64,000 nucleotides of DNA from Oculina patagonica (Eukaryota), in contig NC_135760.1 of NCBI RefSeq assembly GCF_052425735.1, positions 10,540,001-10,604,000 on the forward strand. Reading direction: 5' to 3'. This document shows, piece by piece, positions 25,592-59,968 of the stretch. A program made the translations under genes and the position numbers. Within the stretch, counting starts at the first letter, position 1; each line of letters starts with the position of its first letter. The notes below the pieces were generated by a model. The model was not told where the DNA came from. It ran no database searches and saw only the letters and a list, made by a program, of their open reading frames with translations.

Positions 25592-28500
25592 TCACACTGC
25601 TGTGTTTAAACTGTTGTTACTTTTTCGTTCTGTATTGATGAGAAAGGAGCAATGATTTGAGTTGTAGCAAGATGTACTTTTGTATACTTGACTGTTGATC
25701 TCTTAATAAATGTCCTATTTTGTACTTTTATTTACAAATGCAAAACAATTAATTGTTACATTCAGATAATTTATTATTGTTAAAAACAGTTGGGCACTTT
25801 CTTGGCTTTGTGGATGGTGTGAATTTCTGCAACTGACTATAGTTCTATATCAAATACTCCAGGCAGTGTTTCATTGGCTATCCAAACCCCTTGAATTTCG
25901 TCAAAAATACTCTAGCTGCTGTGCATCATATTTTCAACTCTCTTCTTGGTGTTTGGTTATCCCAATGATACAAAGTCTCTCTTGTTGTGTGATATATTAC
26001 AACTAAAAACACAGTGCAGTATTTGTTTTCTTCTTGCATACCTTTGCCATCAATATGACCTTCTTTTTTGCAACAGCTTTCCTTCACTTTCTCAACAACT
26101 TGCTTTCTTTTTGCGCACATGATTAGTTCAAACACCACAACAATTAGGGTGACAAAACCCATTAAAGCAATGCCAATCTTGTAAGGAAGAACATCCACTG
26201 TCAAAAATAATAGAATTCTTGTTAATATAACAATTAATACATGTATGTATAGTTTAAGCCAAAGAGTACTCATTTGGTGTATTATCTTGGTGTGACTGTC
26301 AAGATAAGAATAACCTTGAGGCATGCTGCAGTGTAACAGTGACCTGCACATTGTATGACAAGTAAATATATGTCACTCTGGCCTGTCCACACAGTCAATA
26401 AGTAGATGTATACCATCAAAACTGAATTGATTTCATTAGGCATATAGGGTGAGGTATCAAATGAAATTGTAAGTGTGCTGTAAATCCCCCCCCCCCCCCC
26501 CGGATGGGATGCTAGTTTATTACAGATTGCTTCCAGAATTTTTTTTAATTTGCCCTACAGTGTAGGAACAGGTTACCAGTACAGTAGATTCCTGTTAATC
26601 TGGTCACTAACAGGCTACAAAAAACAAGCTAAAATAACAGGGACCCATATAAAAGAGGTTCTTGGAATAAGAAAATGACTGACACATGTGGGTCATCACA
26701 AAGTGCAAGGCAGTGAGGTGTGCAATCCATTCCGGTTAGCACTTTGGTTAGGCTAAATGGCAGTTTGGTTAGCCTACAGTTAGCTTAGGTAGCTTGCAGT
26801 TAGCTTTTTTTATTGGGATAAGGGATTTCTGTTTCACATGCCTTGCATGCCTTGCTGCTTTGCCTTGCATGCCTCACTGCCTCGCATATTTGTAAGACTC
26901 ACACACGTAAATGTTTTGTTCAGGCCAAAATAAAATGGCTGTAAATAAACAAGGTGGATCAGGGTTCACTGTACCCATTTTCACACCTGGTTGCAGAGGG
27001 GTACTGTGAGAGTGAAGTGTCTTGCTCAAGAACACAAAGCAACAAAAGGACCCTAGCCACGGATTGATCCAGGATCCAAATTTGTACTAACAACTAGACC
27101 ACGCCTACTACTGATAGATAAAAAGATAAAGTCTGTATTTGAGCCAAGTGGCCCATCAGCCTGGAGCTTATTTCAGTTTCTGTAGCATGTAGCAGCTAGG
27201 AGAATCAGCATTAAATTTGCTGGTACCAATTATGCACCTCAGGGTGGAGAGAGAGAGGCACTGTGGGAGTATTAGTAATTAGTGTCAGTTGCGGGAGAAC
27301 ACAACGCAGTGACCCTGGCCAAGGCTTGGATCCAGTCTGCTCAATCCAGACTTCAGTGCAAAAGAAAAGCCAACAGGCCTCATTAGCAACACAGTCACAG
27401 TGGATGCACTAAAAGTAACAATGCAGATTCCTCACCTTTTTCATTTTCACCGTGCTGTTTTCCAGTATCCGGACCACTTTTACATCTGCAGTTCTCTTCA
27501 TCAGGCACCTCTCCTTGGTCCCACTGGCATTCCAGGTTACATGTACAGTGGCAACTTGTATGATTATATACTGTGATAGTTTTGGGTTCTCCACTTAAGG
27601 GATCTTTTACTTCTAAAGAAATCGCCTCCCTCTTTGATGCTGTGCATGGTTTTTGACTGGGTGGAATGCTCTCGTCACAAGTTCCAGAGCAGCGATGTAG
27701 TAATATGTGAAAAGGTTTGTTCCCCTCGGTTTCTTGAACCACCACTGGTCTTGGCTGACATTTCTGCTCACTTAGTTTTACTGATGAGACTTTCACTGGG
27801 GAAAAACATAGTAAATATTTACACTTTTATATTTAGGAGAATGGGGGGGTGGGAGCCTTGAGCCATGCAGCCCATACCGCCAGAGCTTATCCCTGTTTCT
27901 GTATCATTAGGTGGCTAGGAATATTTTTACTCCCCCCTGAATGGGATGCTAGTCCATTGCAGGGTACCCCCCCCCCCCAGCATTATGTTGCCGTACCCAA
28001 TAATATACCTAGGTGGAGAGAGGCATTAAAAGAGTTAAGACAGATTCCGCTGAAAGTCCGAGCAATGAGTGCGAAAATTAAGTACCAAAAATCTACTCAT
28101 TGCACGGCAACATTTTGTACACTATTTAAAAGATCTCATCGAAATTTATTTGTCTTAGTGACCCCGCAATTAAATTCTAAAGCATTCTCGAGAAAATTAA
28201 AGTCAAACCTCGAAAAAATGTATTAAATGCGCGCCATTTTGTTTTGAACTGGCGCAAGACGTCCGTTTTAACTGAAATAAAGACAACTTCAAATCCATTT
28301 TTCTCTCGCAGGGTCAGCTTGAGTACTAAATTTTTGGCAGGTTTTTGTTAGCTGTACTAAAAACTGTTGCCATGCTAAGAGGTCTTTTTGGTAACTTTAT
28401 TTTTGCCTGTATTGCTCGAATATTGTGCGGAAACCATCTTAAGCAATTTGCCCAAGAACATAACACAGTGACTCCGGCCAGGGCTCAAATCCAGACTGAT

Positions 28501-30508
28501 CAATCCAGAGTACTACGCAGTAACCATTAGGCCACTGTGCCCCCCCGGGGCCCGTTTCTTAAAGGGGGGAAAACCTTCCCGGGGATAAATCTCTATCTAG
28601 TGGATATTGTATTTTTTTTTCCAACATTTTTCCTCTGGATATTTTTTTTTCTATGGAAAAGACAACCCCCCCTTAAAAAACGGGCCAGGTGAATAGAGTT
28701 GATAAAGGGGGCCAGGAAAATTCTATATCAGTAGTTCTGTCATTTTTGTTCATTCTTTCTTAAATTGTTACAACTTGAATTTCCAGAGCTTATTGACTTA
28801 AAATTTGAAGTATGATGTAAAATAAATTTATTAATTTTATGACACCTTGCTCAACCTTTGCCCAAATTAACACCAAACTTTATTGATGACGTTTTACTAT
28901 TATTTTTATGGGATTTTACCCCTAAACAATTATTGTTTAAAAAAAAACATATTGTCGCAACATTGTCGAAATAATTCTGTTAAAGCATTGCAGATATTGC
29001 TTTCTAAAGAATGACCTGGAGTCTGACTCAAATTATCTTCTACATCAATAAGAAGGCAGATGCAACTTGGTCGGTGCTACTAATTAATTAATGTCCATGC
29101 TATCCTCTGTGTAATTGATGAATAACAGTAGCCAATAAACTCCGGATAAATTTTGACAGTTGGAAGCTTTTTAAAAGCAAAGCGGCTCTCCTGGAGCTTG
29201 CTGAACGATTTCTTACGCTTGGCATCACAAGTCGCATCAAATATGAATGAGAAACGCCCAAACAAAATATCGGACAGTTTTACGGCTTTAAAGAGGATAA
29301 AAACTGTTCCTTGCTTTATTTATTTCTGAAGATTAAAAACTACGAGGTGGCAACTGTAATTGTTTACATAGAGAAATCGATCAGATAAGTTGCGTCTATA
29401 ACAACACTTGCGAACACACAAGATTTAAAGGCGCTACGAAAAACAAAAGACTTTAAGCAGTTAATGAAACAGGAATGAAATATTCTTTTTTGGTGCTGTT
29501 AAAAAGCCCACAAAACAAACACGAGCGCTACTGTTTTGTACATAAATAAAATCCCATCAAAGGTGACAAATTCCACACATTGCTTCCCACCATTTAAAGG
29601 GCTGCTGTTTGTGTAATCAAATTGTGATTTCGTAAGCAGAATTTCTCAGAAATTGCGAAAATTAGTTTGACTTCGCCCACATAACAGCCAACAAACATCC
29701 TTCGCTAACTTCTCACAAGTTGCCAAGCCACGGTTAGAATCACGAAATATTCCCATGTGTTCACTTACGCGGAAAATTTTTGGCGGTTTTTCGCGGAACC
29801 GTCATGATCATGAGTGAGTGCAGTTTCCTGACGCATAAAAAAACAAAGCAAATTCTCCTTCCTATTTAAAGACTTGGCATCGAAATAAAGCGAATGGGAG
29901 TGAAAATGATGTTGTTAAGTTCATTTATGAAGTCAAATCAAACGTTTTGATTCGTTCGAAATGTGTTGAAACCGACAAAAGGGTTTACATTTCACCACGG
30001 TAAATCCGCGCGCGCGATCAAATGATATACAAGCATGTAGCGTGAATGTTTTCGTACATAAACAGTTTTATTCAATTCATGGTCTTTATTAGAGATCAAT
30101 CCGAAATAATTTTTAAAACAGTTTCTCGAAAGAAAAGAAGGAAGGTTCTAATTGAAATCGGTTATTTTGTAGCTTCCGTAATAGTGATTTCTAAAGACTT
30201 GTTATCAAACAAATATCAAATTGATCGATGTTTTGAAATTTGCGGCGCCTCTTTCGTTGAGAATGATTATGACCTCAATCTATAATTTTTGATATCAGGC
30301 ACGTTGGGGTGATAAGTTTAAGAACTACTTCTAAAGAAGATGGGAAAGTGCTCGCTGCACGTGAAGTTGTAGTATTGAAATAGTATAGAGTATTGAAGTC
30401 GGCAAGCGCTCACTAACCTGATAACATAAGAAGAGTGACCACAAGGAAAGTAAAGATTGTTGATAGCCTTGTCAATGATCTACAACCACTGCATATGCCG
30501 CAATCCAT
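25592..30508 (-). CDS. Transmembrane PDGF/VEGF-domain protein V1 (short form)
   Basis: Exons 30508-30418 (signal MDCG...TIFTFLVVTLLMLS), 27795-27436 (CQPRP...HRCSGTC...KPC...NHTSCHCTC), 26197-26042 (TM IGIALMGFVTLIVVVFELIMC then AKRK), 25629-25592 (ERKSNNSLNTAV*); all phase-1 GT-AG junctions. Confidence 0.85.
26500..27105 (-). mobile_element. SINE interrupted by a Tc1/mariner MITE (26582-26971), which itself holds a second MITE (about 26687-26902)
   Basis: SINE halves on either side of TA|CAGTAG...CACTG|TA; inner inverted ends TGTGGGTCATCACAAA / TTTGTAAGACTCACA. Confidence 0.6.
27850..28540 (-). mobile_element. SINE interrupted by a TTAA-targeting DNA element (28039-28438, Kolobok-like)
   Basis: SINE body resumes after the duplicated TTAA; imperfect TIR GACAGATTCCGC / GCGGAAACCATC. 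Confidence 0.65.
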
Positions 30509-33500
30509 TTTTCTTCGGGTTGTTGTGTAATCCTGGGCGGAGATGGTTACCCGCTTCGTTTAACTGCGGAGAAACGAAGGTAATGAATGAATGAAGCACC
30601 GAAGGAACTTGTAAAATTATTACTCAAACGCCCCAGCCTCAGAGCCAATCAGGAACGAGGTCAAAGATAGTAAACTTCCGGTGGCTCGGTGCTGAGCGCG
30701 GAGAACCGGAAATTAATCCAAACACGCTCTCTTGCAAACTTTCAAAACTTTTGTTGACTCATGCACTTGATTTAAATTCCTGCAGTTTAAATAGTGGATT
30801 TTTGTCTGCTTATTGCTCAAAGAAGCTGATTTTGTGTCAATGTTTCCTCGGGGAAAAGAATTCAATTGTCAGAAACCCATGACCTTTATGTTTATGCGTC
30901 AGTGCTCCGATCTTTTTCCCAGCTACATTAGCTACGTGAAAAACCCATCCCAGATTCATTCATCTTCCTGTGTTGTTTTACTCGTAATGTACACACCCAG
31001 GGAGACCCAGGTAGAGGAAGTTGTACAACTTCAAAGCACTTCCAACTAACTAAATTTAATTTCTGTGAAGAGATATACAAACCACAGAATAGTCGAGTGC
31101 TCTATTTATTATCTGATCTTGGCGGTTTATATATTCCTGTTCCTGCCTATTAAATTCATCAGCCTAATAGAAAATATGCACTGTTGTGTAAATCAGACAT
31201 TGTTGGATTTGTTTGAATAAAAAAGAAAGCAAAGTTTTCTGCTTTAAAAATATGGCGCGCGCCGGGTTATTGAAGTCAACTTGAGATAGCTTGATGGGTA
31301 GTGAGCATTTTTTGTTGACCGATTTCAATTTTATCTTGTACCTATGAGCCACCATGCTTTACAATTTTTTTCTGTTTAGACTATTTACAAGAGTGGAAAC
31401 ATTCTTGTAGACCTCAGTAAAAGATTAAATAAATGGGGACCTTCGCTTTCAGGCTAGCCTAGATCTAGCGGGCTGGATATATTGCGGAAGACGGCACGCC
31501 TGAAGACAAAAGATAACTCGTATATTTGGTTGACTTCCTGAAGTTAAGTATGTACAACGATCGTTTTCATTTACGTTGTTCCTCTGTGGTTCCTGCGAAT
31601 GAATCTTCTGCGTGCAGGCATGCCGGTGAATAATAACACAGTTATTACTGTGTACCTCCGCTATAAAAGGAAGTTTTTCCGGTGATATCTTCCTGAAAAT
31701 TGTTACGTGAAGAACAATGTGTTGATCGCCCTAACGTCCTGTTCAATCTGCGAAGTACTATTTTCTTTTTTGGTTACGTTCTTAAATGATGTTCTGCGGT
31801 TAACTTAAAATACCGTAATTGGCGCTTGCTTTCGCAGTTAGTCACTCAAACTTTATTTGTTCAACTGTATGAGGTACAGTGTATAGACGTCATAAGTGAC
31901 GTAAATACAGAGCGATCATGCGAAACGTCCAATCTCGAGCAAATGTTTTTAGGCAAAAATTCATTCGCAACACAATATGAGTAAAATATAGTTATATTAG
32001 TGTAAAAGTGGAATATTTCAGCCAATTGCGCCTCGATAGATGAGGATAAGAAACTTATGAGAGTCTTTTTATAGTGAGTCTGCCTTGGAAGACATGAGTT
32101 TTGCGAGGGTGCTACATACATGCACGTGGTCGAGCTTTTAATAAAACGCGAATGCATGCATGATCGAACAGGATAATTACTCTAATCAAGGCCATTCATT
32201 TAGATCTAAACATGGCTTTAAAAGGCATTAATAGAAAGTGATATCTCACTATTACACAGCACATTTGCTTTTATATTCAGTCATACCGAATTATTAGACC
32301 TGTTAATGTGTTACTTCCGAAACAGTCACCTTTTTACTGTTGTTGTGGACAACGAAACGAGCTTTGCTAACAAGCTCTAATAATCTTTAAAAATTGGACT
32401 TGAAAAGTGAAGCAATTATCGCCGAAATTGAACCCACATAAAAGTATTTAACTCACGTGTTATTAAACCAGAATGTCTCGATGAAAAGAAAATCAATTAA
32501 TTTCTTACCTTAATTGCTTTTAAGATCAAAAATCCTTTATCCCGATTAGAAGAAAATACTTTCCTGCTGACTTAGTGTGAGTTCAGCTTTTAGTAGGGTA
32601 GTTTTGGTCCCCCTGGTTGAAGTGTGTGTTCGGTTTATACTGTAATAAAAACGCACCCACCTGTAAATCGGTTTATATCAATCAATTCCGCGGAGGTGGA
32701 ATTTCAGAAATGTCGGTTGCTCCGTTACACCTAAATATTTGCCATAAATTTAGAACAAAAGTTGACAAGGAGTGGTATTAGGCAAGACTTTGTTATTTAG
32801 TCGCGGTGTCCGTAGAAAATAAACGTCATAAAAAGGTGGATTGCTCTAGATTGATAAAGCTAAAAATAATGCGTCGACCTTTGTTAGCAATTTTAAGATG
32901 ATCTTGAGCAAAACAGAGATTATCGTGGGTTAGTGTTTTAAAACGTCGTCAACAATCTGTCACACTTGAACAGTCTAGACTTGTAGTCCCATACTGTGAT
33001 AAAAAAAAATTCAATATTTATTGCCAGTATTATGTTTGTGACATAAACTTTAAAAAAGTTTGTAGATTCGAAACTATTTAGGACATTCTTTCACTTTTGA
33101 TTTTTTTAGATCAAGGAACATGTCGTCTTTCCTGTTGTCTTGTTTTTGTTTTCCAGTATACCATGCAACGGAAAATAACATACACTTACAAAACAAGACT
33201 CCCACATGTCTAATAAAGCGTGGGCCTTGGTTTGATGTTTTCAATTAGCTCAATATAGATTTTTAAAAATTTGTTATCGCTAATTAATTCTTCACTTCCG
33301 GTTTCCACGGATCTCCGCCAAACACTGACGTCATACTAAATGTTTTCGATACCAAGGCGGCAAAAGATTACGGACAATTTCAAGAGCACTCGAGATGTGA
33401 AACTTCGTCTGATAATGTGACCGGTCAAGCAACCACCGGAGATTTCCGACAATATCCGAACATAAAGTCGATAACTCCTCGACCAGCGACGCGCACCCGA

Positions 33501-36047
33501 ATTTGGCAAAGCCCAAACTTGACAAGAATCGAAACAGTTATATTTTTTACAAAACATTCTCACGGGTAGGTAGGCAATTTTTTTAGAGGCTTCCGCAAAG
33601 GAAACGCTTACATGCCTAAGTATTTTTGGAAGCCGGCTTCGTCTTTTTTTGTTTGTTTAGAAATTTCTGGTTACTTAATTTGTTTCATTGTTGTGACCAC
33701 ACTTGGATTCCAGCTAAGTAAAGCCTCAGCTAGCCTGAACAGAAGGCAGAAAGTCTTTTTAGTATCCCGTGTAATCTCGTGATTTTCTTATCGTAAGATA
33801 TTTTCGTAGCTTCCGATTTTTAAGAAGCTTATGCCTATCAGCTCAGTAAATCGATCTTAATTTACTTATCTCTATTTTCACTTACGGTCCGTAGAGAAAT
33901 CTTCCGCAGGAGGAAATCCTCGTGTTTCGAAGACAGATTTAATACGTAATTGTTATCTCTGTGTTTCGCTGTTTCGTTTTTGCGTCGTAAATTGACAGCA
34001 CAATCGAAATAATTAATAATCCGCTGAAGTTAGAACTACTTTTTAAAAAAAAAAAAAAAATCTGTTTGGCCCAAAGTTATTGACTGTCTATTAGACTCAA
34101 TTTACACTAAGCAAAACACACAAAAAAACACTGAGAATCATGTTCAATGTCGCACATTTCAGACTCATTTCAGACCATTTCAAGTTTGCACCTTGTTTAC
34201 GAAGAAATGAAAGTCTGAATTGTGGCGCGTTTGCAAGTGTTTACGAAGAAATTAAAGTAATTGTGGCGCTTCAAATCAATGCGTAAAATTAACGATTTCC
34301 TTTCGAAGCGATTAGCGGATTAGATCTTATTGAATTTAGCGAAAAGTGGAACGGCACTGTTTTTTAGAAGGCAGGTTCGGCCACTGGCTGGGCTGCCATT
34401 GTTAGAATTATGGGGTTTCACAGAAACCCGAATTGCAAACTTTGAATAACAACATAATTCGGGGCTAAAACTAACATGTTCGTGAAGCCTCTGGACCCCC
34501 CCCCCCCCCCCCCTTGTAGACAGTCGGCAAATATCAAAAAGTTCAGAAGCGAGGCTAATCCCCATTATATCAATTGGATTAAACAAGCTTAAACTAATAC
34601 AATAAGTAAGCTTGTGGATCAACTATAAAACCGATGTTATCGAATGGAAACGTTAACTGGGGTTAGTGGCTAAGATGGTAGTGTTTTCTATTAGCCGCAG
34701 AATCGAGACATTATTTCAAGACATTTTCACCACTATTTATTTGTAATATAATAAAAAAAAAGATATTAGGCAACTCGTAACCCAGGGCCCCCCCCCTCCA
34801 GAGCGAGACCAGACCCAACCAGGGCCCTCTCCACTGGGGGGCGGGAGAGAAAGTCCTGGAACGAGGTGGAATAGGGTGATAGAAGTAATATGAGCGAGTG
34901 TTGCTATAATGTTGCTACAATGCACAAACATTCCTAAATTCCAATTCAACCTGGCCTGGAGCCGGACCGCCCCAGACCCGCACAAAAACTAGCTCGGGCT
35001 GAATTGGCTTCCTCTCTAAATATTGTAATTTAAGTTTTCAAACTATAATGGAAGAATCTTGACGAATCAGCAGTGAAAAGTGACACAACAACGTTGAACA
35101 GCAAATGTTTCAGTGTCTGATTGTTTCCACGGCAAAGTGTTGTTTAAAAATTCTTTCCCGCCAAAACAATTGAATGACTGACAAATGACAAGAATTAAAA
35201 GATATATGGTGAGTGAAACTCGACTAAGCTTGCAATTCAGTGTTGTTGTCGGATTTTTTCGGGATTAGATTTCTTTCTTTGCTGATCTTGTACCCAGCTC
35301 TTCAAGCATTCCTAAATACTAGTTAAATATTAGTTAAAAATTGAGAGATCTTTTCCTTTCAGTGAGCTTACCTTTTGAATTCACTCCTATACAAAGTAGA
35401 TTACTGTGGCTACCACGATTTTAGAATAGTCACAGAAACGATTGGAAATTTTCTTTCCAACGAAATATTTATACCATTCATTTCGCCACCTATTTTTAAA
35501 CTAACATATTATTGGCTTTTACACGCTGAGCTCAAAAAATGGAGTTCCTTTAAAAATACTGGGAAGTTGACACTCGACAAATTTTCAAGTTATAAATAAG
35601 CTCGTTTATGGTACATACGTTTTTCCTAATAAGGTTTTAATCTACTTAGAGTTTAAGATTCCCAGAAATTGGCTTCAGTAAAGAGAGGAATTCACCCATG
35701 TCATTCACATAATGAAATTATCCGCACAGGAAGGGGGAAGAGTAAGATTAAGTTTTATGTAAATCCAGCACGACAGCACTAATCTGGATATCTTTGAAAA
35801 CGTATATCTTTCTTTGGTTTGGCCTAAGGTCCACAATAAAAACGGAGCTTTAGGTAATCGAAAAGGGAGCTTTAAGAAAACGTTTCCGGAGCTGAAAAAT
35901 GTGAAAACGCTGGCTAGGTGGTGTAGTGTGGACGGCCGAAAGTCAACAAAACGCTGTCGTCACAAAGATCCTCAAAGTCGTATTTAGCACGGGCTCAAGT
36001 AATGGCGCATGCTCCAATAAGCGTTTTCAAACTTATATCGATATTAA

Positions 36048-36594
36048 CCCTATTCAGACCGGGCTTTTTGGTCCAGACCGGGGGGGGGGGGGCGGACCGC
36101 CCCCCCCCTCCGACTCCAGAATATTTAAGCAATCACAATGAAACACAGGATATATAGTATGTCCCAAATCATCTTGCATATGTCACGTGGGATGATAACG
36201 TCACTATGTGATGACATCATATTTCAAAACAGCCGCCATCTGGATCCGCCATCTGGATTTCGAATTTTTCAAAACGTCAGAAAACCGCCCAAAATATGGA
36301 AAATACTCAAAACCAATAAAAATGTGCTTAAAACCCGTAAACATATGAAAATAATTGCTTTAAAGTTATTTTTCATTAATAGAAACAGGAAAATTACAAA
36401 TTTGGGAAAACATGCCTGTCAAAATGCCGTGCCATGGTGACGTCAGTTCCTGACACAACAACCTACCCTACCAAATTATTCCCAGATAAATTTTAGATAA
36501 AGTCTCCAAGTTTGGCAGCGTTTGGTTGAATATTAAAAAAGTTATAAGCGTTCAAAGTCGGCGCGGGCTTTCCGCCCCCCCGGTCTGGATAGGG
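36048..36594. mobile_element. piggyBac-type MITE
   Basis: TTAA|CCCTATTCAGACCGGG...CCCGGTCTGGATAGGG|TTAA. Confidence 0.85.
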
Positions 36595-37640
36595 TTAAAC
36601 ATTTTATTTATTTTTTGGGTGAAAACTCCGTTTTTGAATTTATCCGGATTAGCTGAGTGTGGACGGGCTATTGTTGCTACTAGCCTGGTGCGTTCACAGG
36701 GTGTTGACTGATGTGTGACGCATTCACGATTGTGGTTCATTTTGCTGACTTCCTTCTCGTGTAATACCGTGACGTATTTACCGTACAGTCGTGGGCGGCC
36801 TTTCTTCGCGACACAATGTTTGTTGTGGAGATGTGGATCGATGAATGAATCAATCGATCAATCAATAAATTATTGAGGAACCCAGGCCGACGTTTGCGAA
36901 CGGGGACTGTAGGTAGTCGCACTCTTTTTATCATACATACATACTTCCAAATAAAAACACAGGATTTTCTTATTGGGTCATGAAAAACACAATATTAAAT
37001 TAAAAACAGACTGTGTTCCTTTTCAGCCCTGGTTAACTTTCATTCTCGCCGTTTTGGGCCTTATTCCAATTTTCTTTTTTATTTCAGATCTTCCTTTTCT
37101 TAATTTCAATTAATTAGCCTTATTTGGCAAATCATTATCTTCGTCACTTACGTCACTTAGTTAAATTGATTTTTAAGGGTTTTGTTTTTGGCGCATTTCC
37201 TGTCCTGTATGATATACGTAGACTTGCGAAGATATACGTAGACTTGCGGGTTCACGGGAAATCCCCGAAACAGGCTCGAAAGGAACTTGTTCAGTCAGCT
37301 GAACAAGTGTCAAATAACTCTATCAAGCAGTCCGTTCATGAAAATACTGTTAATCTTTATTTTGCACTTGTTTTCAAGGTCTTAAATATTTCTTTACAAT
37401 AAATAATCATCTTTCGGGGTTTTGCTTGCATTTCATGCATGCAGCTTTCACTGAAATTAATAAATATTAAATAACTTTATCGAGCTTACTGAACTCGAAG
37501 AAACAATTTTGTACACTTTTCTTAGCCGTAGCTTTCGAATTAAATAGACATGCCCTCAGTGTGAGGCATTGAAAATAATATCAAACTCCTGTTACTAATA
37601 TCCTTCACTTCGGATATGAGTCGGACCTGCTGCTTTGATT

Positions 37641-50790: not shown

Positions 50791-51722
50791 GGCCAAATTT
50801 AAACAAGTCTTCTCTCTTCGTCTTAGCTTAGGGGTGTTGTTTCAGTGTTAACAGTCAGTAATCCAAGCAGAAGGACCAGGAGCTCACTCCTTCGCCGCCG
50901 ATTTGCAAAGTACTACTATGCTAATATGTTCGTTTCTGATCGATATCTGAAAGCCGACTTCCTTTCAAATCGTCTGAAAGCGAATGCAAATCAACCCAGT
51001 CACGAGACGTAATTAGATAAGCGCAGAACAAAAGGTTAAAAGGCAAAGGAAGTAAAAAATAGCGCCGCTAAGTCAACGCCTTTTATGTTTTATGTTTAAA
51101 TTGTATTCAAGTACCGCAAGGGGTTTTCCCTTTTCCCCACCCGCTTAATTATAGCGTGAGAAAAAAAAGTAAAAACCACTGCGTTGAATAGATTCTTAGA
51201 ATTAATAAACATTGGCTTGCATAAGGGTTCACACCCCTTTTATCACACGATAGAAGAATAAACTTCAGGATGTTTTAAAACAAAATTGTTTGATGACCGG
51301 AAACATGTTATTACCGAGTTCATGATATGACTCCCGATTCCTGAGTCCTCTTGACGCACGCATACGGCAAAATATTGATTCTTCTAAAATCGATACGTAC
51401 ACGCCAATTTCCTTTGACGTATGTGTACGACAAAATGTTACACGTTGCCTCCTTGCTAAAAATATTTGTTTCTTTTTCTGGACAAGAAGAATAAGAAGCT
51501 AGTTGTAAAGTACCTAAACTTGCTCGTGTGCACGGCTCGATAAGAGAAACGTAATCGAGGAATTAGAACTTATGACGTCATGAGAGGAGAAAGTAATATT
51601 TGATCATCATACTTTATCAGGCTTTTAAAATGGGAAATAAAACCAATTAATCAGTTTTCCATATATTTTCCGTATTTTTTTCCCGCGAACTTTGACTTAT
51701 ACTGGTACGAATGTATAATGTA

Positions 51723-51901
51723 CAGTTGAATCCCGATAATTCGAACCTTCAAGGGAAATCGAAAAAGGTTCGAATTATCGGGGGCTCGAGTTATCGAGGG
51801 TAAAATTTGTAAAAAGAAAATGACCTGGAGGGGAATCGAAAAAGGTTCGAGTTAGCGCGAGGTTCCAGTTACTGAAAGTTCGAGTAATCGGGATTCAACT
51901 G
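51723..51901. mobile_element. Tc1/mariner MITE
   Basis: TA|CAGTTGAATCCCGAT...ATCGGGATTCAACTG|TA. Confidence 0.85.
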
Positions 51902-52468
51902 TATAGGGAAAATCCCGAATAATATGGGATTGCGGTCACAAATTTTCCCGACTAGGGTCTTTTTTTTATTTTATGTCGGGAAATTCCAGGCCATCGGGAA
52001 CTTCGTTTTTCTACCATTTGACCCAAATCTCGGTATTTTCGGTTAAAAACCAAATAGAAGAGTCATTTTCCGGAAGTTATTTTCGAGAATTGTGCGCTAC
52101 GTTTCATTCCGGTCGGTCAAACTGTCGAAAAACTTTTTACTACTTATAATCCATCTCTCTTGTTTCCAGTCTCTTATCAAGAGAAAAACATAACTTCTAA
52201 CCGTAAACTGCATTATAAATGGTAAGCGCCATCTCTTTCGGTCGGTCTGCTGATTTGGAAAAATACACACCACTGGTCATTCTAACCAGTTTATTTTGGC
52301 AAATGAAAATTATCCCTGGTTCTTGACGCCTTGTCTAGTACCTAGGCCTCTATTTTCGTCGCAGTCAAACCGTTTCGGGTCACGTGGAATTTCGTATCAG
52401 ATAAGTCACTGAAATGAATTGACCGTGCGGGCCTGGGAAAGAACGCCGTACAGGAACTAGGCTTGTTA

Positions 52469-52762
52469 CATTCTCGTCTTTCTTAGCCGGCTGCACCTTG
52501 GCACGAGATAACAAAGGGCTCTGGGGACACAGGATTTCCAGTCCTAGATTCTAGGACTTCCGGTCTTCATGTATGCAGTCATGACGTTTCAAAAGAATGT
52601 ATGACAGAGTCGTTACGTTTTCGACTTCCGTTTAGGAATTCTTTGTTCCAAACAGCCAATCAAAAAAATCGAATTAATTCAAAAATCCTATGTCTCCAGA
52701 GCCCTTTGTTTTCTCGTGCCAAGCCGGCTAAGAGAAACGAAAGGGCTATGGGGACGAGAATG
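52469..52762. mobile_element. Long-TIR MITE (relatives at about 23120-23400 and 46395-46474)
   Basis: CATTCTCGTC...GGCACGAGATAACAAAGGGCTCTGGGGACA / TGTCTCCAGAGCCCTTTGTTTTCTCGTGCC...GACGAGAATG. Confidence 0.75.
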
Positions 52763-54140
52763 GGCTTATTATTACTATTTAAGACTTCGCCATCACTGCC
52801 CCCCGTCACTCCCACCACCCCCTACCCCATTTGGCGATTAGCTATGGCGACTGGGAAAAAGTTTATAGTTTATATCATTCTTTTTGCGGTAGTTGTTTTG
52901 GATGACAATTTAAAAATCATTCCTGATCGAAACGCCAGCTCACAGGCTATTTAAATTTTTTAAAATCGGCTATAAATTTTACAATTGGTTACTCTCCTCA
53001 TGTTCCTCATGTTATAATGGGATGGAATTTTCTTTCAGTTTCGTAGCATTGTATATGGTATATAAATTTCCGTCAAGAAATTAGTAGCAACCAAAGGGTA
53101 TATCAGGGTACATAGAGAATGGTTTTCACATCCAGTTAAAATCTCCGAAGAAACGAAAACAGAAACATTTGCTACGATATATACAATTTATTATTTTGTT
53201 TATTTTTTCAATATTTAACACCATTTTTCTCTTTGAAAGTAACAAGCTAAATAATGGAAGCGTTAACAATATCGTACACGAAGTATTGACTGCGCATGTT
53301 TATTTCTTAACCGCAAGAAACACAAAGACGCTGGGTAGGAGATTTCTGGAATACAAAAGGTCACGTGATATTACCACTACTTTATCTGCCGCCAATTCGT
53401 GGTGGCTACACTTTATCAACTATTATTGATAAGAAATATTGTTGAAATATAAAGTTCTTTTCTCAGAAAAGATAATATACCGAAGGGATTAAATATACAT
53501 TTGTATATCTTATGAATGAAGTTTCCTTCATTTTACACTATACTCAACTACTTTATTTCCGACACAAGCTAAGATATTTGTTGTTTGCTAGTGGTACAAA
53601 TGTCTGGTGTACCCCTGATTAAAGCAAAGTAAAACTCTTCTTCGAATGAAAGATTTTGAACCAGTAACTTTTACAGATGTAACTGGCTTTTATAGAAAAA
53701 GACCTATTAACTGACCAATGACTTCCAACAACGTGTCGTATTTGGTAATCTTTACAGATTTTACATTCAACAAAATTGCGGAATGGTTCTTTATATTTCG
53801 CACTTACGTCAAACGATTTCATTTCCACTAAAAGATTATATTTTTACAAGTTGACTATATGTGTCATGGAAACGGCTAAGCACAGAACGAAGCAAAAGAC
53901 AAAATACCTATCTCTTTCGGTTACCCATTAACGGCAGGGAGCCATGAAAGGCGGTTATATTCGTAACCATTCGCTTCTTTCAGTCACTAATAAACTCGAC
54001 AGTGTCCAAAAACACGATTTGTCTTATTGCCTTAAATGATGGTTGTCTTAGGGTCTAAATATCGCGGAATTTTTCTTGACTTGCATCCCGCGTCTCTTCC
54101 GTATTTACTGCCCATGAGATACTGTATTTATATCCAGGTC

Positions 54141-57100
54141 TTATATATCTGTTACCCGTGGTTTTGGAGACAGGGGAGCAGTGCAGCTGTCATTATCACT
54201 CGACTCCTTTGCACCATCTATGGAATCTGTAGAATCAGACTCAACAGCCACCTCTAAATCTGCAAAATACAACGTGGAAAAATTCTCATTAATGTTTATA
54301 AGACTGCAGGACCTCTGGCCAACCTAAAGCATTACATTGTATATATTTCAAGCGAGTGGCCTGGGGGCTGTTAGATGGTATACTGACTTTTTCTGAAGTA
54401 CAATTCAAGGAAAATTTAACAACTTCATGAGTATCGCATATCAATTTATCTAGATCGGGAAGGGGGGGGGGGGAGAGAAATACAAAATACTCAAAACCCT
54501 ATTGTAAGGTGGCATCATTGGATCAATTTAGGTTTCTGGGAAACTGCTCACCTACCCCTCCCCAAACTTAACATTAACCCTTACTTATCGCTTTGGGCAA
54601 AATGTTAGGTTTGGGGAGGGGTAGGTGAGCAGTTTCCCAGAAACCTAAATTGATCCGCATCATTTAGCACTGCCAACAATAAACACTTAACCCCTGCCAT
54701 CTTTTGGTGGTAGCTTTTGTTACTTTTTCCCTGTTTTCTAAAGTATTCCGTTCAAGGGCTACTTGATAAACTTCAAGGAACTGGGAAATTCTTTACGCCG
54801 GAAAAAGGTTTGTGGGAACCGTAAAACTACATTTACTACAAAAGGACGCGGTCAAGTGCTGTCAGACATGACGCATGCAATAAAGTTCTCACGCAGCGTC
54901 AATCCCACCCCTTCCCCGTTTAGGTTGTTTTGTGGAATTTCCAACAGTTAATCAAAGTTTAAAGAGCAAAAATGCTTGAGGGAATTTCAAAAAATCTTAC
55001 AGTACAGTGCTCTTTTCATTTCTTTACCTTTTTCCCAAAAATGCCTTTATTGCAATCTACTTAAAAGTACAAATATTCTAAAAAGACACTTACAGGGTGG
55101 AGAAATATCATCATTAGTCTTGCACGAGTCTAATCTGTCGAGAGCGGAATGGGCCGAGCTCTGTTGGTTTCTTTTTCGTACCCAGTGCACAAGAGCACAG
55201 ATGAGGAGAATGATTAGCACAGCTTGACCAATCAGAAGCGTTATGAACATATGGGTCCGCGATTGAACTGCAAATTGAAACAAAATGGTGTAATATTTAA
55301 TATGTAAGTTTTAATGAGGCAACGAAAGTAATTATCACGTAATACATTGGAATGTATTGTATTGTTATATAGCTAGAATTTTTCCCCAACTGCGCGCGCT
55401 CTTATTGGCTAAATCTATGACGTCAGAGGGTAACATTGCAATGTTGCCCGCGAATGCTGACCCACGAGCGCCATTTCATTTCTTCGTCGTGCTGTACAAC
55501 AAAACACTTAATGACTGATGAGTGTATATTGTAAAGGTAGATAAACTATGTTATTATACCTGTTTTGTGATCGCGGAAGGCCCGCTGCACGTCTACGCAC
55601 TTGCAGTCTACATCAATTCCCATTTTCATTTGTGTACAGTCATTCACAACACTGTCAGGGCACCTACAGCCACAAATGTCATTGCTCCACACCTGAACAA
55701 GACGAGTAACAAAATAGATCGATTATTGATGCAATAGAGCCTCACAGTTAACTTTACCAGTAATGATACAACTTATAGACCTCAGGAGATTATTACTGGG
55801 GAGTGTGTATTAGACCAAGGGTTTTGAGTATAAAAATAGTGTAATTGTAGTCAGGGGATGACATAGTTTGTTAGTGATTTGACGCTGACTGTTTTTTATG
55901 CCATTTTTCCAAATCGTCTCGGCTAGTGCTTAAGCCTTCATCAGTTAAATAATCAATGCTGTTACACGCGATTTAAAAAGGCAACACGTTTGCGCACGCT
56001 GCAAAAATTTAGGTTTTGCGTGTAAGGGTTTGATTTTGCAACCCTACAAGACAGGTTTTGCGTATAACGTAGTCTCTTTTTAGCACGTAGTTTGTCCGCG
56101 AAACATAGGTTTGAATACGTAGGCACCAGCTGTTTAACCTCATTTGCATGTAGCAGACGAGAGACCGATTCGAGATAGGACACTGGAAACATGATTGCGC
56201 ACTGTATGCCGACGCTGTCTAGGTGCCAAATTGCTCATAGACAGCAGTCTTGGAGCATAGAAAACAGCTTGTGATGTAAGACTTACCATTCCTGGACAAG
56301 GGTCAGGTGCTCGATCACATTCGCATTTGCATTTATGGCTGTTCCACCTGAAGGAGAATAAAAATAGTTAAATTTTAGTAAAACTAAACAACCAATTGGG
56401 AGAAGTACCATAAACACGGGATTTACAAGACTCGTCGCCACCACTAACAGAAGTTATAAATGCACACGGCATCGGTAAAGTGAAAGTATAGTTTATTCTT
56501 TCCACTGCTGACTTCATAAATGAACAAAGATACCATTTCATTCATATTTCCAATTCATAGTCTTTTCTCCGAGTAACAATTGCAAAGCATTCTGAAAGGC
56601 TGACAAAGCCGACAAACCTAGTGAAATACATGTATTGAGACTATTTACGCATTCAAGTTTAATTTGGTCAGTTAATTTCAATTTCATTAAAAAAATTTAT
56701 GCGTTCGTTTTGCATTAAGTTTTTCAAATTCGCTGAACAAAAGTGAAGTGCGCTGTCTTCAATTTGTGGCTAAATGATGTTTTTGTTGAGCCACTTGGCT
56801 AGAATTGGGATTTTTTTAAGAAACCAAAGCTAATACGTAAATGATTGAACAAGTCGCACACTTACCTAAAGCCGTCTTTGCAAGCGAGTTCTTTTGGTGG
56901 TCCGTTGGGATACCTGCACTTGCAAGCGCAGAGGTCATTGCTCCAGTCCTGCACGGTCAAATCACAATCAGCGGGACTGGCGACACACTCGTGAGCGCAG
57001 CTTGTGTGATTCTTCATCGTGATGGTTGCACGACGAAAGTTGGTCGAGCGCGAATAAACTTGAATGTTTAACTCGTCGTAGCTTTTGACCACGCAGTGCT

Positions 57101-57833
57101 GGACTTTTGGGGAAACTGTGTTCGCCGAACCAGCGCATCGGTGGAGCTTGACAAAATACGGGAAATAGCCGTGATCGTTGGGGTCCACGGGAACCACAGT
57201 TTCATGCGTTTTACAGTGAATATTTTCCAAATCTGCGAAGAATAAAATGGTTATTATCAGTATTATTATAAATATCACCAGAAACTTAGCAGGTGGGTGG
57301 GTGGGAGGGAGGGTTGCGGGTCGACGGAATGGTGGTAGTGGGGGGAGGGGGAGAGGGATGGGGTGTTGGCGGTTGATGGGGACTGCTTGTAATACCCACT
57401 AATACGTTCATCCGAGTCGTTAATATTCCACTAAATTCCGTTTGACTTTTAAACCTATAACTTTTATAAAGCTACTAACCCCCGAGGGGACACGCCGCAG
57501 CTTCAAGACGTGAATTCATTACCCTTTTAATACCCAAGCTGGAAAAGGCACACTTCTTTCGAGCGGAACCTCCCCGTATCGTCTAGTCTACTATAGGCGG
57601 ACTACCCCAGGGGTATGACACTTTTTCAGTTTGATTTGTCCTCTTTCCGTTGCGGAAAACAATCTGAGAGCTGGGAACAAGTCAAATGAGACTCTCTGAT
57701 AACAATCAAGATCGAAACATTTACGCTACTTACTTTTCACTTTTTTAGCAGAAACCGTCATATCCATCAGTTCCAACAGACACAGGAAAAATATTATTGA
57801 CACTCTGGCGGGACTGTTAGCTTTATTTGCCAT
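54141..57833 (-). CDS. Transmembrane PDGF/VEGF-domain protein V4 (degenerate cystine knot)
   Basis: Exons 57833-57734 (MANKANSPARVSIIFFLCLLELMDMTVSA), 57232-56866 (PYFVKLHRCAGSA...QHC...NHTSCAHEC), 56347-56287, 55692-55560, 55267-55094 (TM MFITLLIGQAVLIILLICALVHWV then RKR), 54259-54141 (YLEVAV...KPRVTDI*). Confidence 0.9.
54520..54656. mobile_element. 137-bp fold-back MITE, GG...CC ends, 8-bp TSD
   Basis: About 55-bp near-perfect arms; TSD GCATCATT at 54512-54519 and 54657-54664. Confidence 0.9.
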
Positions 57834-59968
57834 GTTTTGTTCTTGTTTGCTCTTCAAGAAGAAACTTTTGAGGTATCTAAAAGAAACGCAAAAGTTTAGT
57901 TTGACAGCTAAATCTTGTTCTTCTTCCATCTACGTAATTTGTCTACCTTCTGTGTGAAGACCTCTCCGTACAAGTCGTACAACAAAATAAAAATGTTTGA
58001 TTGGTGCAAAATCGTCCGTCCTTTTGCGAGTTTTTCCTTATTTTAAACCTTATATTTGGCGAAAACGAATTAGTCGATCCATGCGGTGTAGAACAACTCC
58101 AAGTAAGCTGACAATTTTATATGCAGATTAACCATACTTGATCGCTCATTTTTCTTAAGAAAACGGGAAGTTTACTGATCCGGATGCGCTGTTAATTAGG
58201 TGTCAGAAAACACTCTTGCACAATAGCGCTGGGACATGGGAAAGGTTTCCTGTTCAAACAAAATGAGGCTACTCCCAGGAAGTCAATAAAAAAGACTTTC
58301 TAAGTAATGGTTATCAATTACTGAGGGTTTCAGTGGTTCTTAGTTCCAAGAATTCAAGGCGCACTCAGTTTGAAACGTTTTAGTTCAGTAACTGCATGTC
58401 TCAGAGGTTTAAACGTTTCCTGTTCAAAACAATCTTCCCGGGTCGCGGACCACGTACGGTTGTTATCCAAAATGATATTCAAATGAAGCGAAGATTGCTT
58501 GCAATCGATCGATCGAGTCATTAAGTGGCAAAAGTTTATATTACAGAAATCGGAAATTAACTTTTTAGCTCGCCAACCTGCCTGTTTAAAAGAACGGTCA
58601 ATTTGAGATTTTCTCAGCAAATGTGATTCAAATGGACACGAATAAAGAAGCAATTACACATTACAGGCCACAGTCCAACTCATTTGCATGTGTCGGAATG
58701 ATCGGCTGGTATAAACATAATTGGAACTGACTCAAAAATCATGTATCGTATAATTCGTCCTTGTTTTCGTCTCAGCGAAATCAGTTGGGCATGAAGTTTT
58801 CAAGAATATTTCGTGTTTTTAGGCTCAGAAGCGCTAAGAACATGGAAATTTTAACGTTGAGTTTCTCAGGGAGGCATAAGCCCGGAATGAAATAAGTCCC
58901 GATTTTACCGCGAATTTTGCGGTTTCAAAGAGCAAAAGTTCATCTGATTTATATTACATCATTCGTCACTTGCTTAAGATTTGCTTTTCTAACCCTTAAT
59001 GTTTGTTTTTCTTAAGACTTATCTACCGGTCAGAATATTAAATACACTATCACCAAATTCGTGCATTTGAAAATGCTATTAAAATTTACGAAGAACTGAC
59101 GAGACACTTTGGCAAGGGCAAGTTCTTTCAGTATGTTCATTTACGATGACATTTAGTTGATCTTTCGATGCTTATGCAAGAATCTTAAATAGTCATTAAT
59201 GAAGTAAGTAAGTGTGGGCCTTTAGATCGTTGTGTACCTCAATGAATGAAGCATAGGAGAATCAGGGAAAACGAAATTTTCATTCCTGCAATATAAACTG
59301 ACTTAATTAGGAAGTCGAATGCATGTTACTCGTAAACTTTCTTCAACCTACGGACACGATGCTTATCCACGAAGCGTTATTGTTGTTGTGAAATGCACTC
59401 TAAACTGGACCATAACCTTCAAACTTTTACACATTATTTTAAAGCTGAAACTGGCGATTTGAGTCTCTAACGTAAAACAAAATGCCGGCATCAAAAGTTA
59501 GCGAAACTTTTCAGTCGCAAATTTATTGATAGTGCAGAGATCGAATAAAAGCCGTGAATTCGCGAGTTAATAAGGCATTAACAGATTTTACATACCGTAT
59601 TGAAAATGGCTCCGAAAATTTCGTGGACGTTCAATTTGCGAAGATCTTTCAGTAGCGCTGATCTGTCCCTGTGCTAGCTTTCCCTTTTGCTAAAAAGAGC
59701 GATCTCAAAAACGATCTAGTCCTCAACGAAACGATTTCAGAGAGGTGTTATCACTAACAATAACTCCTTGAAATTTGCATTTGATCAGAAAAGCAATTTT
59801 GTGATGCTATTGAAAATGCGTAAGTACAGAGTTAATTTACACGCTCCAATAAAAGAGCAATGAGGCGGGAAGTTGGCGTCTGCGTGTATTGACTGCAATT
59901 AAAGACCATACCGCATTTATAAACACAGTGCGTGCAGTATATATATCCATATCAGAATGAAGACTTAC

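What the first reader, a model, noticed from the sequence alone, without database searches (positions are those of the whole stretch)
25592..57833. Tandem array of four single-pass transmembrane PDGF/VEGF-like ligands
Seen: four same-strand spliced genes, each with a signal peptide, a PDGF/VEGF homology domain (C-x-P-R start in V1/V2, H-R/Q-C-x-G, N-H-T-x-C), VEGF-C/D-style CxCxC repeats (only one partial unit in V1), a hydrophobic helix on its own phase-1 exon followed by basic stop-transfer residues, and a cytoplasmic tail. Established: PDGF-A to D, VEGF-A to D, PlGF and Drosophila Pvf1-3 are secreted or matrix-bound, not integral membrane proteins. Inference: this is a membrane-tethered, juxtacrine (or shed) PVF ligand family expanded locally in an anthozoan. 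I know of no description of such a family but could not search.
Basis: partly seen in the sequence, partly recalled or inferred. Interest (0 to 1): 0.9.

Follow-up and report, generated by a model that had tools for sequence, protein, structure and literature searches.

The report
Membrane-anchored VEGF-like ligand gene cluster
A coral (Oculina patagonica) carries four neighbouring genes for VEGF/PDGF-type growth factors that, unlike every described member of that family, are built as single-pass membrane proteins, and the same design is found across corals, sea anemones, soft corals and jellyfish.

Summary
Four minus-strand spliced genes (V1 25592-30508, V2 37641-40604, V3 45344-50790, V4 54141-57833) each encode a signal peptide, a PDGF/VEGF homology domain, VEGF-C-type Cys repeats, one transmembrane (TM) helix on its own phase 1-1 exon, and a cytoplasmic tail.

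- **V4:** single RNA contigs join all six exons, including the TM exon.
- **V1 and V2:** my models are identical to GenBank proteins of Oculina patagonica.
- **V3:** supported by homology only. Both assembly gaps fall in its introns.

AlphaFold models of V2 and V4 match VEGF-A/B/C/E and PDGF-B structures.

The "local expansion" reading is wrong. Each paralogue has 1:1 orthologues in other corals. The TM design also occurs in Actiniaria (including Nematostella), Ceriantharia, Octocorallia and Scyphozoa: 52 of 64 long family representatives carry the helix.

All four tails end in [ST]-x-[VI]. This is a PDZ-ligand or ER-export type C-terminus and is strongly enriched in the family. V3 and V4 have lost one knot disulfide as a pair.

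I found no paper describing membrane-anchored PDGF/VEGF ligands. The main survey of cnidarian VEGFs never uses the word "transmembrane". Ligand function, and whether signalling is juxtacrine or follows shedding, are untested.

The scan's own notes report a further such gene about 7 kb beyond this window; I did not check it.

The parts
57734..57985 (-). V4 exon 1: 5'UTR and signal peptide; start codon at 57833; an upstream in-frame ATG at 57929
   Evidence: RNA contigs and joint 57232/57734; translation
56866..57232 (-). V4 exon 2: PDGF/VEGF homology domain plus first CxCxC unit; lacks knot cysteines C5 and C8
   Evidence: AF2 pLDDT 86.8 and VEGF/PDGF fold hits
56287..56347 (-). V4 exon 3: CxCxC repeat unit
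   Evidence: RNA joints, GT..AG
55560..55692 (-). V4 exon 4: CxCxC repeat unit and stalk
   Evidence: RNA joints
55094..55267 (-). V4 exon 5: TM helix followed by VRKRNQQ; 174 nt, phase 1-1
   Evidence: Joined to exon 4 and exon 6 in contigs of all four runs
53314..54259 (-). V4 exon 6: acidic, Ser-rich tail ending TDI; stop codon at 54141-54143; then 3'UTR
   Evidence: RNA contig X2 record 8
50718..50790 (-). V3 exon 1 (predicted): signal peptide
   Evidence: Phase-1 GTGAGT donor; aligns with orthologue N-termini. No RNA check.
48506..48890 (-). V3 exon 2: PDGF/VEGF homology domain, lacking C5 and C8
48087..48227 (.). Assembly gap, inside V3 intron 2
47801..47864 (-). V3 exon 3: repeat unit
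46978..47113 (-). V3 exon 4: repeat unit and stalk
46146..46298 (-). V3 exon 5: TM helix followed by GRK; 153 nt, phase 1-1
   Evidence: words held by at least 12 RNA runs
45803..46069 (.). Assembly gap, inside V3 intron 5
45344..45387 (-). V3 exon 6 (predicted): short tail ending SAV
   Evidence: Phase-1 acceptor; tail resembles that of homologue P0027
40553..40604 (-). V2 exon 1: signal peptide
   Evidence: identical to GenBank ACROYT_G009370
39785..40209 (-). V2 exon 2: full-knot PDGF/VEGF domain plus two repeat units (equals V4 exons 2+3 fused)
   Evidence: Pfam PDGF 29.9 bits; PDGF-B E=0.002; AF2 pLDDT about 98; fold hits
39029..39188 (-). V2 exon 3: repeat unit and stalk
38347..38481 (-). 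V2 exon 4: TM helix with mid-helix Gln and the FDAILY-KK motif; 135 nt, phase 1-1
   Evidence: AF2 helix 217-241
37641..37765 (-). V2 exon 5: tail ending THV
30418..30508 (-). V1 exon 1: signal peptide
   Evidence: identical to GenBank ACROYT_G009369
27436..27795 (-). V1 exon 2: full-knot PDGF/VEGF domain, one partial repeat, stalk
26042..26197 (-). V1 exon 3: TM helix followed by KRK; 156 nt, phase 1-1
25592..25629 (-). V1 exon 4: tail end, finishing TAV

Best explanation
Each gene encodes a type I membrane pro-ligand of the PDGF/VEGF (PVF) family. After signal-peptide cleavage, a VEGF-C-like ectodomain sits outside the cell. It consists of the homology domain and one to three Cys-repeat units that act as a spacer. 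A 18-27 residue stalk and one TM helix hold it to the membrane. A short cytoplasmic tail ends in [ST]-x-[V/I].

Shown here: the exon structure, transcription of V4, the fold, the conserved TM helix and C-terminus, and the wide cnidarian distribution.

Inferred: the ectodomain forms a non-covalent dimer, because both interchain cysteines are absent. It engages a VEGFR/PVR-type receptor tyrosine kinase on a touching cell (juxtacrine), and/or is released by a juxtamembrane sheddase. There is no furin-type site between domain and membrane. The C-terminal valine or isoleucine would serve ER export and PDZ-scaffold-dependent sorting or clustering, as I recall for pro-TGF-alpha and membrane Kit ligand. 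Because every TM exon is an in-frame cassette, skipping it could yield a soluble isoform.

V3 and V4 lost the C5-C8 disulfide together and are a diverged, still constrained subclass. The four genes are an old tandem cluster conserved among stony corals.
For: RNA contigs join the signal, PDGF, repeat, TM and tail exons of V4. The V1 and V2 models equal the deposited proteins.

The profile search gave 760 relatives. Of the 64 representatives of 240 aa or more, 52 have a helix starting near residue 218, followed by a tail of 25-144 aa.

The helix aligns across the family, with a conserved mid-helix Glu/Gln and a juxtamembrane motif. A C-terminal [ST]x[VIL] occurs in 21 of 63 proteins against 1.8 expected, and all four window genes have it.

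AF2 on V2 gives pLDDT 84.5 and a TM helix at 217-241. The top 50 PDB hits are all VEGF or PDGF, and the best Swiss-Prot models are VEGF-C/D including the repeat region. The V4 domain gives pLDDT 86.8 and the same fold.

Orthologues of each paralogue exist in other corals. Named TM-bearing relatives come from five cnidarian groups. No RX[KR]R site is present. All TM exons are multiples of 3 nt.
Against: There is no receptor, binding, surface-display or shedding data of any kind.

Pfam recognises only the V2 exon above its cut-off and none of the full-length proteins.

V3 and V4 lack a ring-forming knot disulfide, and all four lack the interchain cysteines, so classical ligand behaviour cannot be assumed.

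TM topology rests on hydropathy, flanking charges and AF2, not on a dedicated predictor. In only 35 of 52 homologues is the cytoplasmic flank more basic than the outer flank.

V3 has no direct splice evidence.

TM-exon skipping appears only in old gene models of other species. It was not among the listed joints for V4.
Confidence: 0.7

Rival explanations
1. Obligate precursor. The membrane form is only a trafficking intermediate. Activity needs proteolytic release of a soluble, diffusible factor, as with Drosophila Spitz or much of TGF-alpha signalling, so signalling is not juxtacrine.
For: Stalks of 18-27 residues lie between the last cysteine and the helix. Secreted TM-less PVFs coexist in the same species, showing that soluble signalling is in use. 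The TM exons are in-frame cassettes.
Against: No furin-type site is present. The helix and the C-terminus carry conserved sequence features beyond simple hydrophobicity, which suggests the anchored form has functions of its own. No shed form has been observed.
Confidence: 0.3
2. Not signalling ligands. The proteins would be surface adhesion or recognition molecules, matrix organisers, or membrane-bound antagonists that occupy or sequester the receptor. This applies especially to V3 and V4, whose knot is broken.
For: Loss of the C5-C8 pair in V3 and V4, and of the interchain cysteines in all four. Pfam similarity is weak. The paralogues are very diverged, at 27-45% identity.
Against: The homology domain is predicted with high confidence to keep the VEGF fold. 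A solved VEGF-A C61A/C104A mutant is among the fold matches. [quoted passage not shown]
Confidence: 0.15
3. Venom components, by analogy with snake-venom VEGF-F. This follows the 'toxin candidate' label on a tube-anemone homologue.
For: Homologue P0032 is named 'toxin candidate'. A zoanthid study lists a VEGF-like transcript as toxin-like.
Against: A TM anchor plus a cytoplasmic tail with a conserved C-terminus does not fit a discharged venom protein. The labels come from similarity screens, not from venom proteomics.
Confidence: 0.03
4. Gene-model artefact. The TM and tail exons would belong to other transcripts, or the copies would be pseudogenes.
For: V3 has no direct splice evidence and has two gaps in its introns.
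Against: Single RNA contigs span all V4 exons. Independent annotation gives the same V1 and V2 proteins. Transcript-derived full-length orthologues with the same layout exist in many species. All frames are open and all splice sites are GT..AG.
Confidence: 0.02

Closest known systems
VEGF-C / VEGF-D (and the 'proto-VEGF-C-like' cnidarian PVFs catalogued by Rauniyar et al. 2023, PMC10328876)
   Same: A VEGF homology domain followed by Balbiani-ring-3-type CX10CXCXC repeats. The NHT-x-C sequon sits before the last knot cysteines. These are the best full-length structural matches. The survey notes that interchain cysteines are often missing in cnidarian members.
   Different: VEGF-C/D are secreted and activated by propeptide cleavage. 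These proteins have no long N-terminal propeptide and no RX[KR]R site. They do have a TM helix, and a cytoplasmic tail with a PDZ-type end. The survey never mentions a membrane anchor.
Drosophila Pvf1-3 and C. elegans PVF-1
   Same: Invertebrate PDGF/VEGF-family ligands. Some lack interchain cysteines.
   Different: By established knowledge they are secreted, with no TM segment. The arthropod PVF-like Atlas cluster aligns only to the ectodomain (residues 10-188) of the V2 model.
Membrane-anchored receptor tyrosine kinase pro-ligands: pro-TGF-alpha/EGF family, Kit ligand (SCF), CSF-1
   Same: Type I layout with a growth-factor ectodomain, a short stalk, one helix, and a short tail ending in valine. 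Juxtacrine and shed modes coexist. Soluble versus anchored forms are set by splicing or cleavage. (These properties are from my own knowledge, not tested here.)
   Different: The receptor-binding folds are unrelated (EGF domain, four-helix bundle). No homology is implied, only a shared way of working.
Engineered VEGF-A C61A/C104A (PDB 1MKK)
   Same: Lacks the same knot disulfide (C5-C8) that V3 and V4 lack naturally. It is among the fold matches.
   Different: A laboratory mutant of a secreted human protein. V3 and V4 are natural, and the loss is shared by their coral orthologues.

Membership tests
PDGF/VEGF growth factor family (Pfam PF00341) | Profile match at or above the curated cut-off (27 bits) | tested here: inconclusive
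   V2 exon scores 29.9 bits (passes). V4 scores 21.6 and V1 scores 17.0 (both below). V3 has no hit. Full-length V1, V2 and four homologues match nothing.
PDGF/VEGF growth factor family (Pfam PF00341) | Cystine-knot fold of the homology domain | tested here: met
   AF2 models of V2 (pLDDT about 98 over the domain) and V4 (86.8). All top PDB matches are VEGF-A/B/C/E/F, PlGF or PDGF-B, with TM-score by target 0.55-0.70.
PDGF/VEGF growth factor family (Pfam PF00341) | Six knot cysteines (C1, C3, C5, C6, C7, C8) | tested here: inconclusive
   Met in V1 and V2. Not met in V3 and V4, which lack C5 and C8 together.
PDGF/VEGF growth factor family (Pfam PF00341) | Two interchain cysteines (C2, C4) giving a covalent dimer | tested here: not met
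   Absent in all four. Also absent in accepted members PVF-1 and PVF-2 according to PMC10328876, so this is not disqualifying.
PDGF/VEGF growth factor family (Pfam PF00341) | Secreted, soluble or matrix-bound protein | tested here: not met
   A TM helix and cytoplasmic tail are encoded and spliced in.
PDGF/VEGF growth factor family (Pfam PF00341) | Binds and activates a class III/V receptor tyrosine kinase | not testable with these tools
   No receptor is in the window and no binding assay is possible.
VEGF-C/D subclass | BR3P-type CX10CXCXC repeats C-terminal to the homology domain | tested here: met
   Present in V2-V4, with one partial unit in V1. VEGF-C/D are the best full-length structural matches, covering residues 25-205. 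Pfam PF03128 itself was not matched.
VEGF-C/D subclass | N- and C-terminal propeptides removed at dibasic convertase sites | tested here: not met
   No RX[KR]R in any of the four. The mature N-terminus lies a few residues before C1.
Membrane-anchored RTK pro-ligands (functional class, not a homology family) | Type I topology: signal peptide, ectodomain, one helix, basic flank, tail | tested here: met
   Hydropathy and flanking K/R. AF2 helix 217-241. No dedicated topology predictor was available.
Membrane-anchored RTK pro-ligands (functional class, not a homology family) | C-terminal valine or PDZ-ligand motif | tested here: met
   The four tails end TAV, THV, SAV and TDI. 21 of 63 homologues end [ST]x[VIL] against 1.8 expected, and 39 of 63 end in V, I or L.
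Membrane-anchored RTK pro-ligands (functional class, not a homology family) | Regulated ectodomain shedding and/or juxtacrine receptor activation | not testable with these tools
   Needs cell-based assays.

The most novel reading that the evidence does not exclude
Membrane anchoring is the ancestral cnidarian state of PDGF/VEGF signalling, and possibly older. On this reading the ligand is a contact-dependent, polarity-sorted surface molecule. Its conserved mid-membrane Glu/Gln and its PDZ-type tail give it functions of its own: clustering, interaction with a partner inside the membrane, or reverse signalling as in ephrin-B. Freely diffusing VEGFs and PDGFs would then be derived forms that arose by loss or skipping of the in-frame TM exon.
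Probability: 0.2. Interest if true: 0.85.

Novelty: new variant of a known kind. Interest (0 to 1): 0.62.

Why it matters
By established knowledge, every described PDGF, VEGF and PVF is secreted. Range is set by matrix binding and proteolysis.

A large, old, pan-cnidarian clade built as single-pass membrane proteins would add contact-dependent signalling to this family. It would parallel the anchored ligands of the related Kit and CSF-1 receptors. It would also reopen the question of how the first VEGF-type signals worked in animals without vessels.

The idea can be tested directly. Nematostella, a genetically tractable species, has such a gene (XP_032227124.2).

The finding also warns that cnidarian 'VEGF-like toxin candidates' and 'balbiani ring protein 3-like' annotations hide membrane proteins.

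For this window specifically, it shows that the four genes are an ancient conserved cluster, not a recent burst.

Tried and rejected
- **Pfam on full-length proteins:** no family at E <= 0.1, although the V2 exon alone passes. My guess, not tested, is that HMMER's bias correction acts on Cys-rich sequence. PF03128 (CXCXC) was never matched.
- **Word-index search with the Stylophora V3 orthologue:** did not return an Oculina V3 protein, so V3 has no annotation cross-check.
- **The look-up of encoding contigs for V2:** not on record.
- **My first V2 exon 3 donor (GTCCGG):** wrong by 45 nt. Corrected against the deposited protein.
- **Second candidate V3 first exon (50013-49935):** rejected because orthologue N-termini align with the 50790-50718 exon.
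- **TM-exon skipping as a shown soluble isoform:** rejected as shown. The two TM-less models (Stylophora PFX20686, Nematostella EDO31946) are old predictions. Their RefSeq replacements, and for Stylophora a transcript-derived protein too, contain the helix.
- **Local expansion:** rejected by the tree.
- **Nine literature searches and five papers checked:** no membrane-anchored PVF was found. Subscription-only papers, such as the first Podocoryne and Hydra VEGF reports, could not be read.
- **Search for TM-bearing PVFs outside Cnidaria:** only indirect. All named hits were cnidarian, and the arthropod cluster aligned to the ectodomain only.

Full report
**What is in the sequence.** The window has three N runs: 15296-15795, 45803-46069 and 48087-48227. 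Four ORFs on the minus strand carry PDGF/VEGF-like cysteine patterns, at 27395-27796, 39779-40171, 48502-48924 and 56862-57278. A tblastn of the assembled V4 protein against the window finds these four paralogous exon sets and no others. As single exons they hit Pfam PDGF (PF00341) weakly. V2 scores 29.9 bits against a cut-off of 27, V4 scores 21.6, V1 scores 17.0, and V3 scores nothing. V2 matches PDGF-B chains at E about 0.002.

**RNA evidence for V4.** RNA runs hold 0.14-0.30 of the sampled words of 54000-58000. Logan contigs of four runs were laid on 52300-58200. They gave joints with CT..AC ends, which are GT..AG on the minus strand. The joints are 57232/57734, 56345/56864 (+2), 55690/56285 (+2), 55267/55560 and 54259/55094. 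The exon 2/3 joint appears in three runs and the other four in all four runs. One 1830-nt contig and one 1111-nt contig run through all the exons. The spliced mRNA encodes 317 aa. Its parts, in order:
- a signal peptide;
- the homology domain;
- three Cys-repeat units;
- an 18-residue stalk;
- a helix followed by VRKRNQQ;
- a roughly 70-residue acidic, Ser-rich tail ending TDI.

**Gene models for V1-V3.** I used GT..AG sites and the V4 intron phases to build V1 (214 aa), V2 and V3 (284 aa).
- **V1** is identical to GenBank ACROYT_G009369 [Oculina patagonica]. Its CDS ends at 25592, the finding's start.
- **V2** is identical to ACROYT_G009370 (298 aa) once the exon 3 donor is placed at 39029. 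The window is therefore from O. patagonica.
- **V3** has no annotation or splice read available to me. It aligns without breaks to the Stylophora V3 orthologue and three transcript-derived homologues, from the signal peptide through every exon junction. Its short tail resembles that of homologue P0027. Words of its TM exon are held by at least 12 RNA runs, at 0.2-0.4 against 0.5 in the best holders.

**The assembly gaps.** Both gaps lie inside V3 introns. 48087-48227 is in intron 2 (47865-48505). 45803-46069 is in intron 5 (45388-46145). No reading frame crosses either gap. I did not try to fill them.

**Architecture.** In all four genes the helix sits on its own exon of 156, 135, 153 or 174 nt. 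Each is a multiple of three with phase 1 on both sides. V2 lacks the intron that splits V3/V4 exons 2 and 3. None of the four has an RX[KR]R site, and each has the NHT sequon before the last knot cysteines. Alignment to PDGF-B and among the paralogues shows three things:
- all four lack both interchain cysteines;
- V1 and V2 keep the six knot cysteines;
- V3 and V4 lack C5 and C8 together, as do their coral orthologues, whereas the Actinia tenebrosa 'VEGF D-like' relative of V4 (P0025) keeps both.

**Fold.** AlphaFold2 on V2 with a 63-sequence alignment gave mean pLDDT 84.5. Values were about 97-98 over residues 20-190. The model has a helix at 217-241 and a disordered tail. The 50 listed Foldseek PDB hits are all VEGF-A/B/C/D/E/F, PlGF or PDGF. 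In Swiss-Prot AFDB the best matches are VEGF-C and VEGF-D, over residues 25-205, which covers the domain plus the repeats. The V4 homology domain, despite the missing disulfide, gave pLDDT 86.8 and the same matches. Among them is the solved VEGF-A C61A/C104A mutant.

**The family elsewhere.** A profile of the four exons found 760 proteins at E <= 0.001 among 1.84 billion representatives, 223 of them at E <= 1e-10. Among the best 150, 52 of the 64 that are at least 240 aa long have a strongly hydrophobic 19-mer. It starts at a median of residue 218 and is followed by a tail of 25-144 aa.

Of the 12 long representatives without a helix:
- two are old gene models whose RefSeq counterparts contain the helix: Stylophora PFX20686 against XP_022798412, and Nematostella EDO31946 against XP_032227124.2;
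- some look like fragments or fusions;
- about six look like genuinely secreted VEGF-C-like proteins.

Named TM-bearing relatives come from these groups:
- Scleractinia: Stylophora, Porites, Orbicella, Oculina;
- Actiniaria: Actinia tenebrosa ('VEGF C-like' and 'VEGF D-like'), and Nematostella;
- Ceriantharia: a 'toxin candidate';
- Octocorallia: Dendronephthya and Xenia;
- Scyphozoa: Rhopilema, Aurelia and Sanderia.

Every named hit is a cnidarian. An ESM Atlas shape search aligned a cnidarian cluster over residues 2-277 of the model, but an arthropod PVF-like cluster over 10-188 only.

**Age of the cluster.** In a maximum-likelihood tree each of V1-V4 groups with orthologues from other corals, with SH-aLRT support of 96-100. 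The TM-bearing sequences, plus one TM-less, long-branched Orbicella protein, separate from three secreted VEGF-C-like proteins at 98. The Stylophora orthologues of V4, V2 and V3 lie on one 394-kb scaffold with near-consecutive gene numbers. A 667-aa Porites product is two such genes fused head to tail. The array is therefore an old, conserved cluster, not a local expansion. The scan's notes mention one more such gene about 7 kb beyond the window. I could not check that.

**Conserved features of the anchor and tail.** The helix aligns across the family. Most members have a Glu, or a Gln as in V2 and V4, about a third of the way in. Many have a juxtamembrane Y-x-KK-x-G-[LC]-x-Y motif. The tails are otherwise unalignable. 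Even so, 39 of 63 end in V, I or L. In addition, 21 of 63 end in [ST]-x-[VIL], against 1.8 expected from tail composition (binomial P about 4e-17; the sequences are related, so this is not a true probability). The four window proteins end TAV, THV, SAV and TDI. From my own knowledge, such ends are class I PDZ ligands, and a C-terminal valine promotes ER export of pro-TGF-alpha and membrane Kit ligand. This was not tested here.

**Most likely mechanism.** These are type I membrane pro-ligands of the PDGF/VEGF family. They are displayed on the cell surface as non-covalent dimers. They would signal to a VEGFR/PVR-like kinase on adjacent cells, after juxtamembrane shedding, or both. The tail would govern export, sorting or clustering. 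In-frame TM cassettes offer a route to soluble isoforms, but that is unproven. The main rivals are obligate shedding, a non-signalling or antagonist role (above all for V3 and V4), venom use, and artefact. I weigh each in its own section; the last two are unlikely.

**Literature.** The comprehensive survey of PDGF/VEGF evolution (PMC10328876) reports 72 cnidarian VEGF-like proteins. It describes them as VEGF-C-like, with BR3P repeats and often without interchain cysteines. Its main text has no occurrence of 'transmembrane' and none of 'secreted'. Hydra, zoanthid and Nematostella papers treat cnidarian VEGF-like genes as ordinary or toxin-like secreted factors, or only name them. Phrase searches for membrane-bound, membrane-anchored or transmembrane VEGF, PDGF or PVF returned only receptor papers among those listed. 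Further searches found nothing relevant. Subscription-only papers were not searchable.

**Verdict.** It is wrong about local expansion. The proteins are already in databases under uninformative names. I rate this a new variant of a known kind, of moderate to high interest. All functional statements remain inference.

Noticed in passing
window 52497-52723: Inverted repeat with 41-nt arms, 93% complementary, 145 nt apart. It coincides with very high RNA word depth (about 3,000-11,500) and 'opposite strands' joints in the runs. It is probably a multi-copy hairpin element (MITE-like) whose depth sums many genomic copies. It lies between V3 and V4.
   Followed up: partly
window 54467-54663: A second high-depth stretch (219-2387), inside V4 intron 5, with contigs running off into unrelated sequence on both sides. 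Probably another dispersed repeat.
   Followed up: no
window 42492-42549 (-): Partial tRNA match (Rfam RF00005, 34.3 bits, model positions 9-63) between V2 and V3. Possibly a tRNA-derived SINE remnant.
   Followed up: no
window 38488-38538 and 38773-38823: A perfect 51-nt direct repeat. One copy ends six bases upstream of the acceptor of the V2 TM exon, and the other lies 285 nt further up in the same intron. There is also a 43-nt repeat and a 51-nt inverted repeat nearby. This is a local duplication of the acceptor region.
   Followed up: partly
window 57929 (-), V4 exon 1: An in-frame ATG 32 codons upstream of the presumed start lies inside the transcribed exon. Orthologue lengths favour the downstream start at 57833.
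   Followed up: partly
TM exons of V1-V4 and homologues (alignment A2): A conserved Glu/Gln in the middle of the membrane helix, and in many members a juxtamembrane Y-x-KK-x-G-[LC]-x-Y motif or a Cys just after the helix. A charged residue conserved inside a single-pass helix usually points to a partner within the membrane. No partner is known.
   Followed up: partly
homologues P0001 / P0214 (Stylophora), P0031 / P0223 (Nematostella), P0266 / P0267 (Orbicella): In three species, alternative or older gene models differ exactly at the TM exon: it is skipped in frame, or read in another frame in Orbicella isoform X1. These are either annotation artefacts or hints of soluble isoforms.
   Followed up: partly
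window 39785-40209 versus 56287-57232: V2 has one exon where V3 and V4 have two, with no intron after the GFR/W junction. This is an intron gain or loss within the cluster.
   Followed up: no
V1 exon 1, window 30418-30508: The V1-type N-terminus (MD-x-x-x-C-x-x-C-[RK]-x-L-[ST]-[RK]) is conserved among orthologues well beyond what a signal peptide needs.
   Followed up: no
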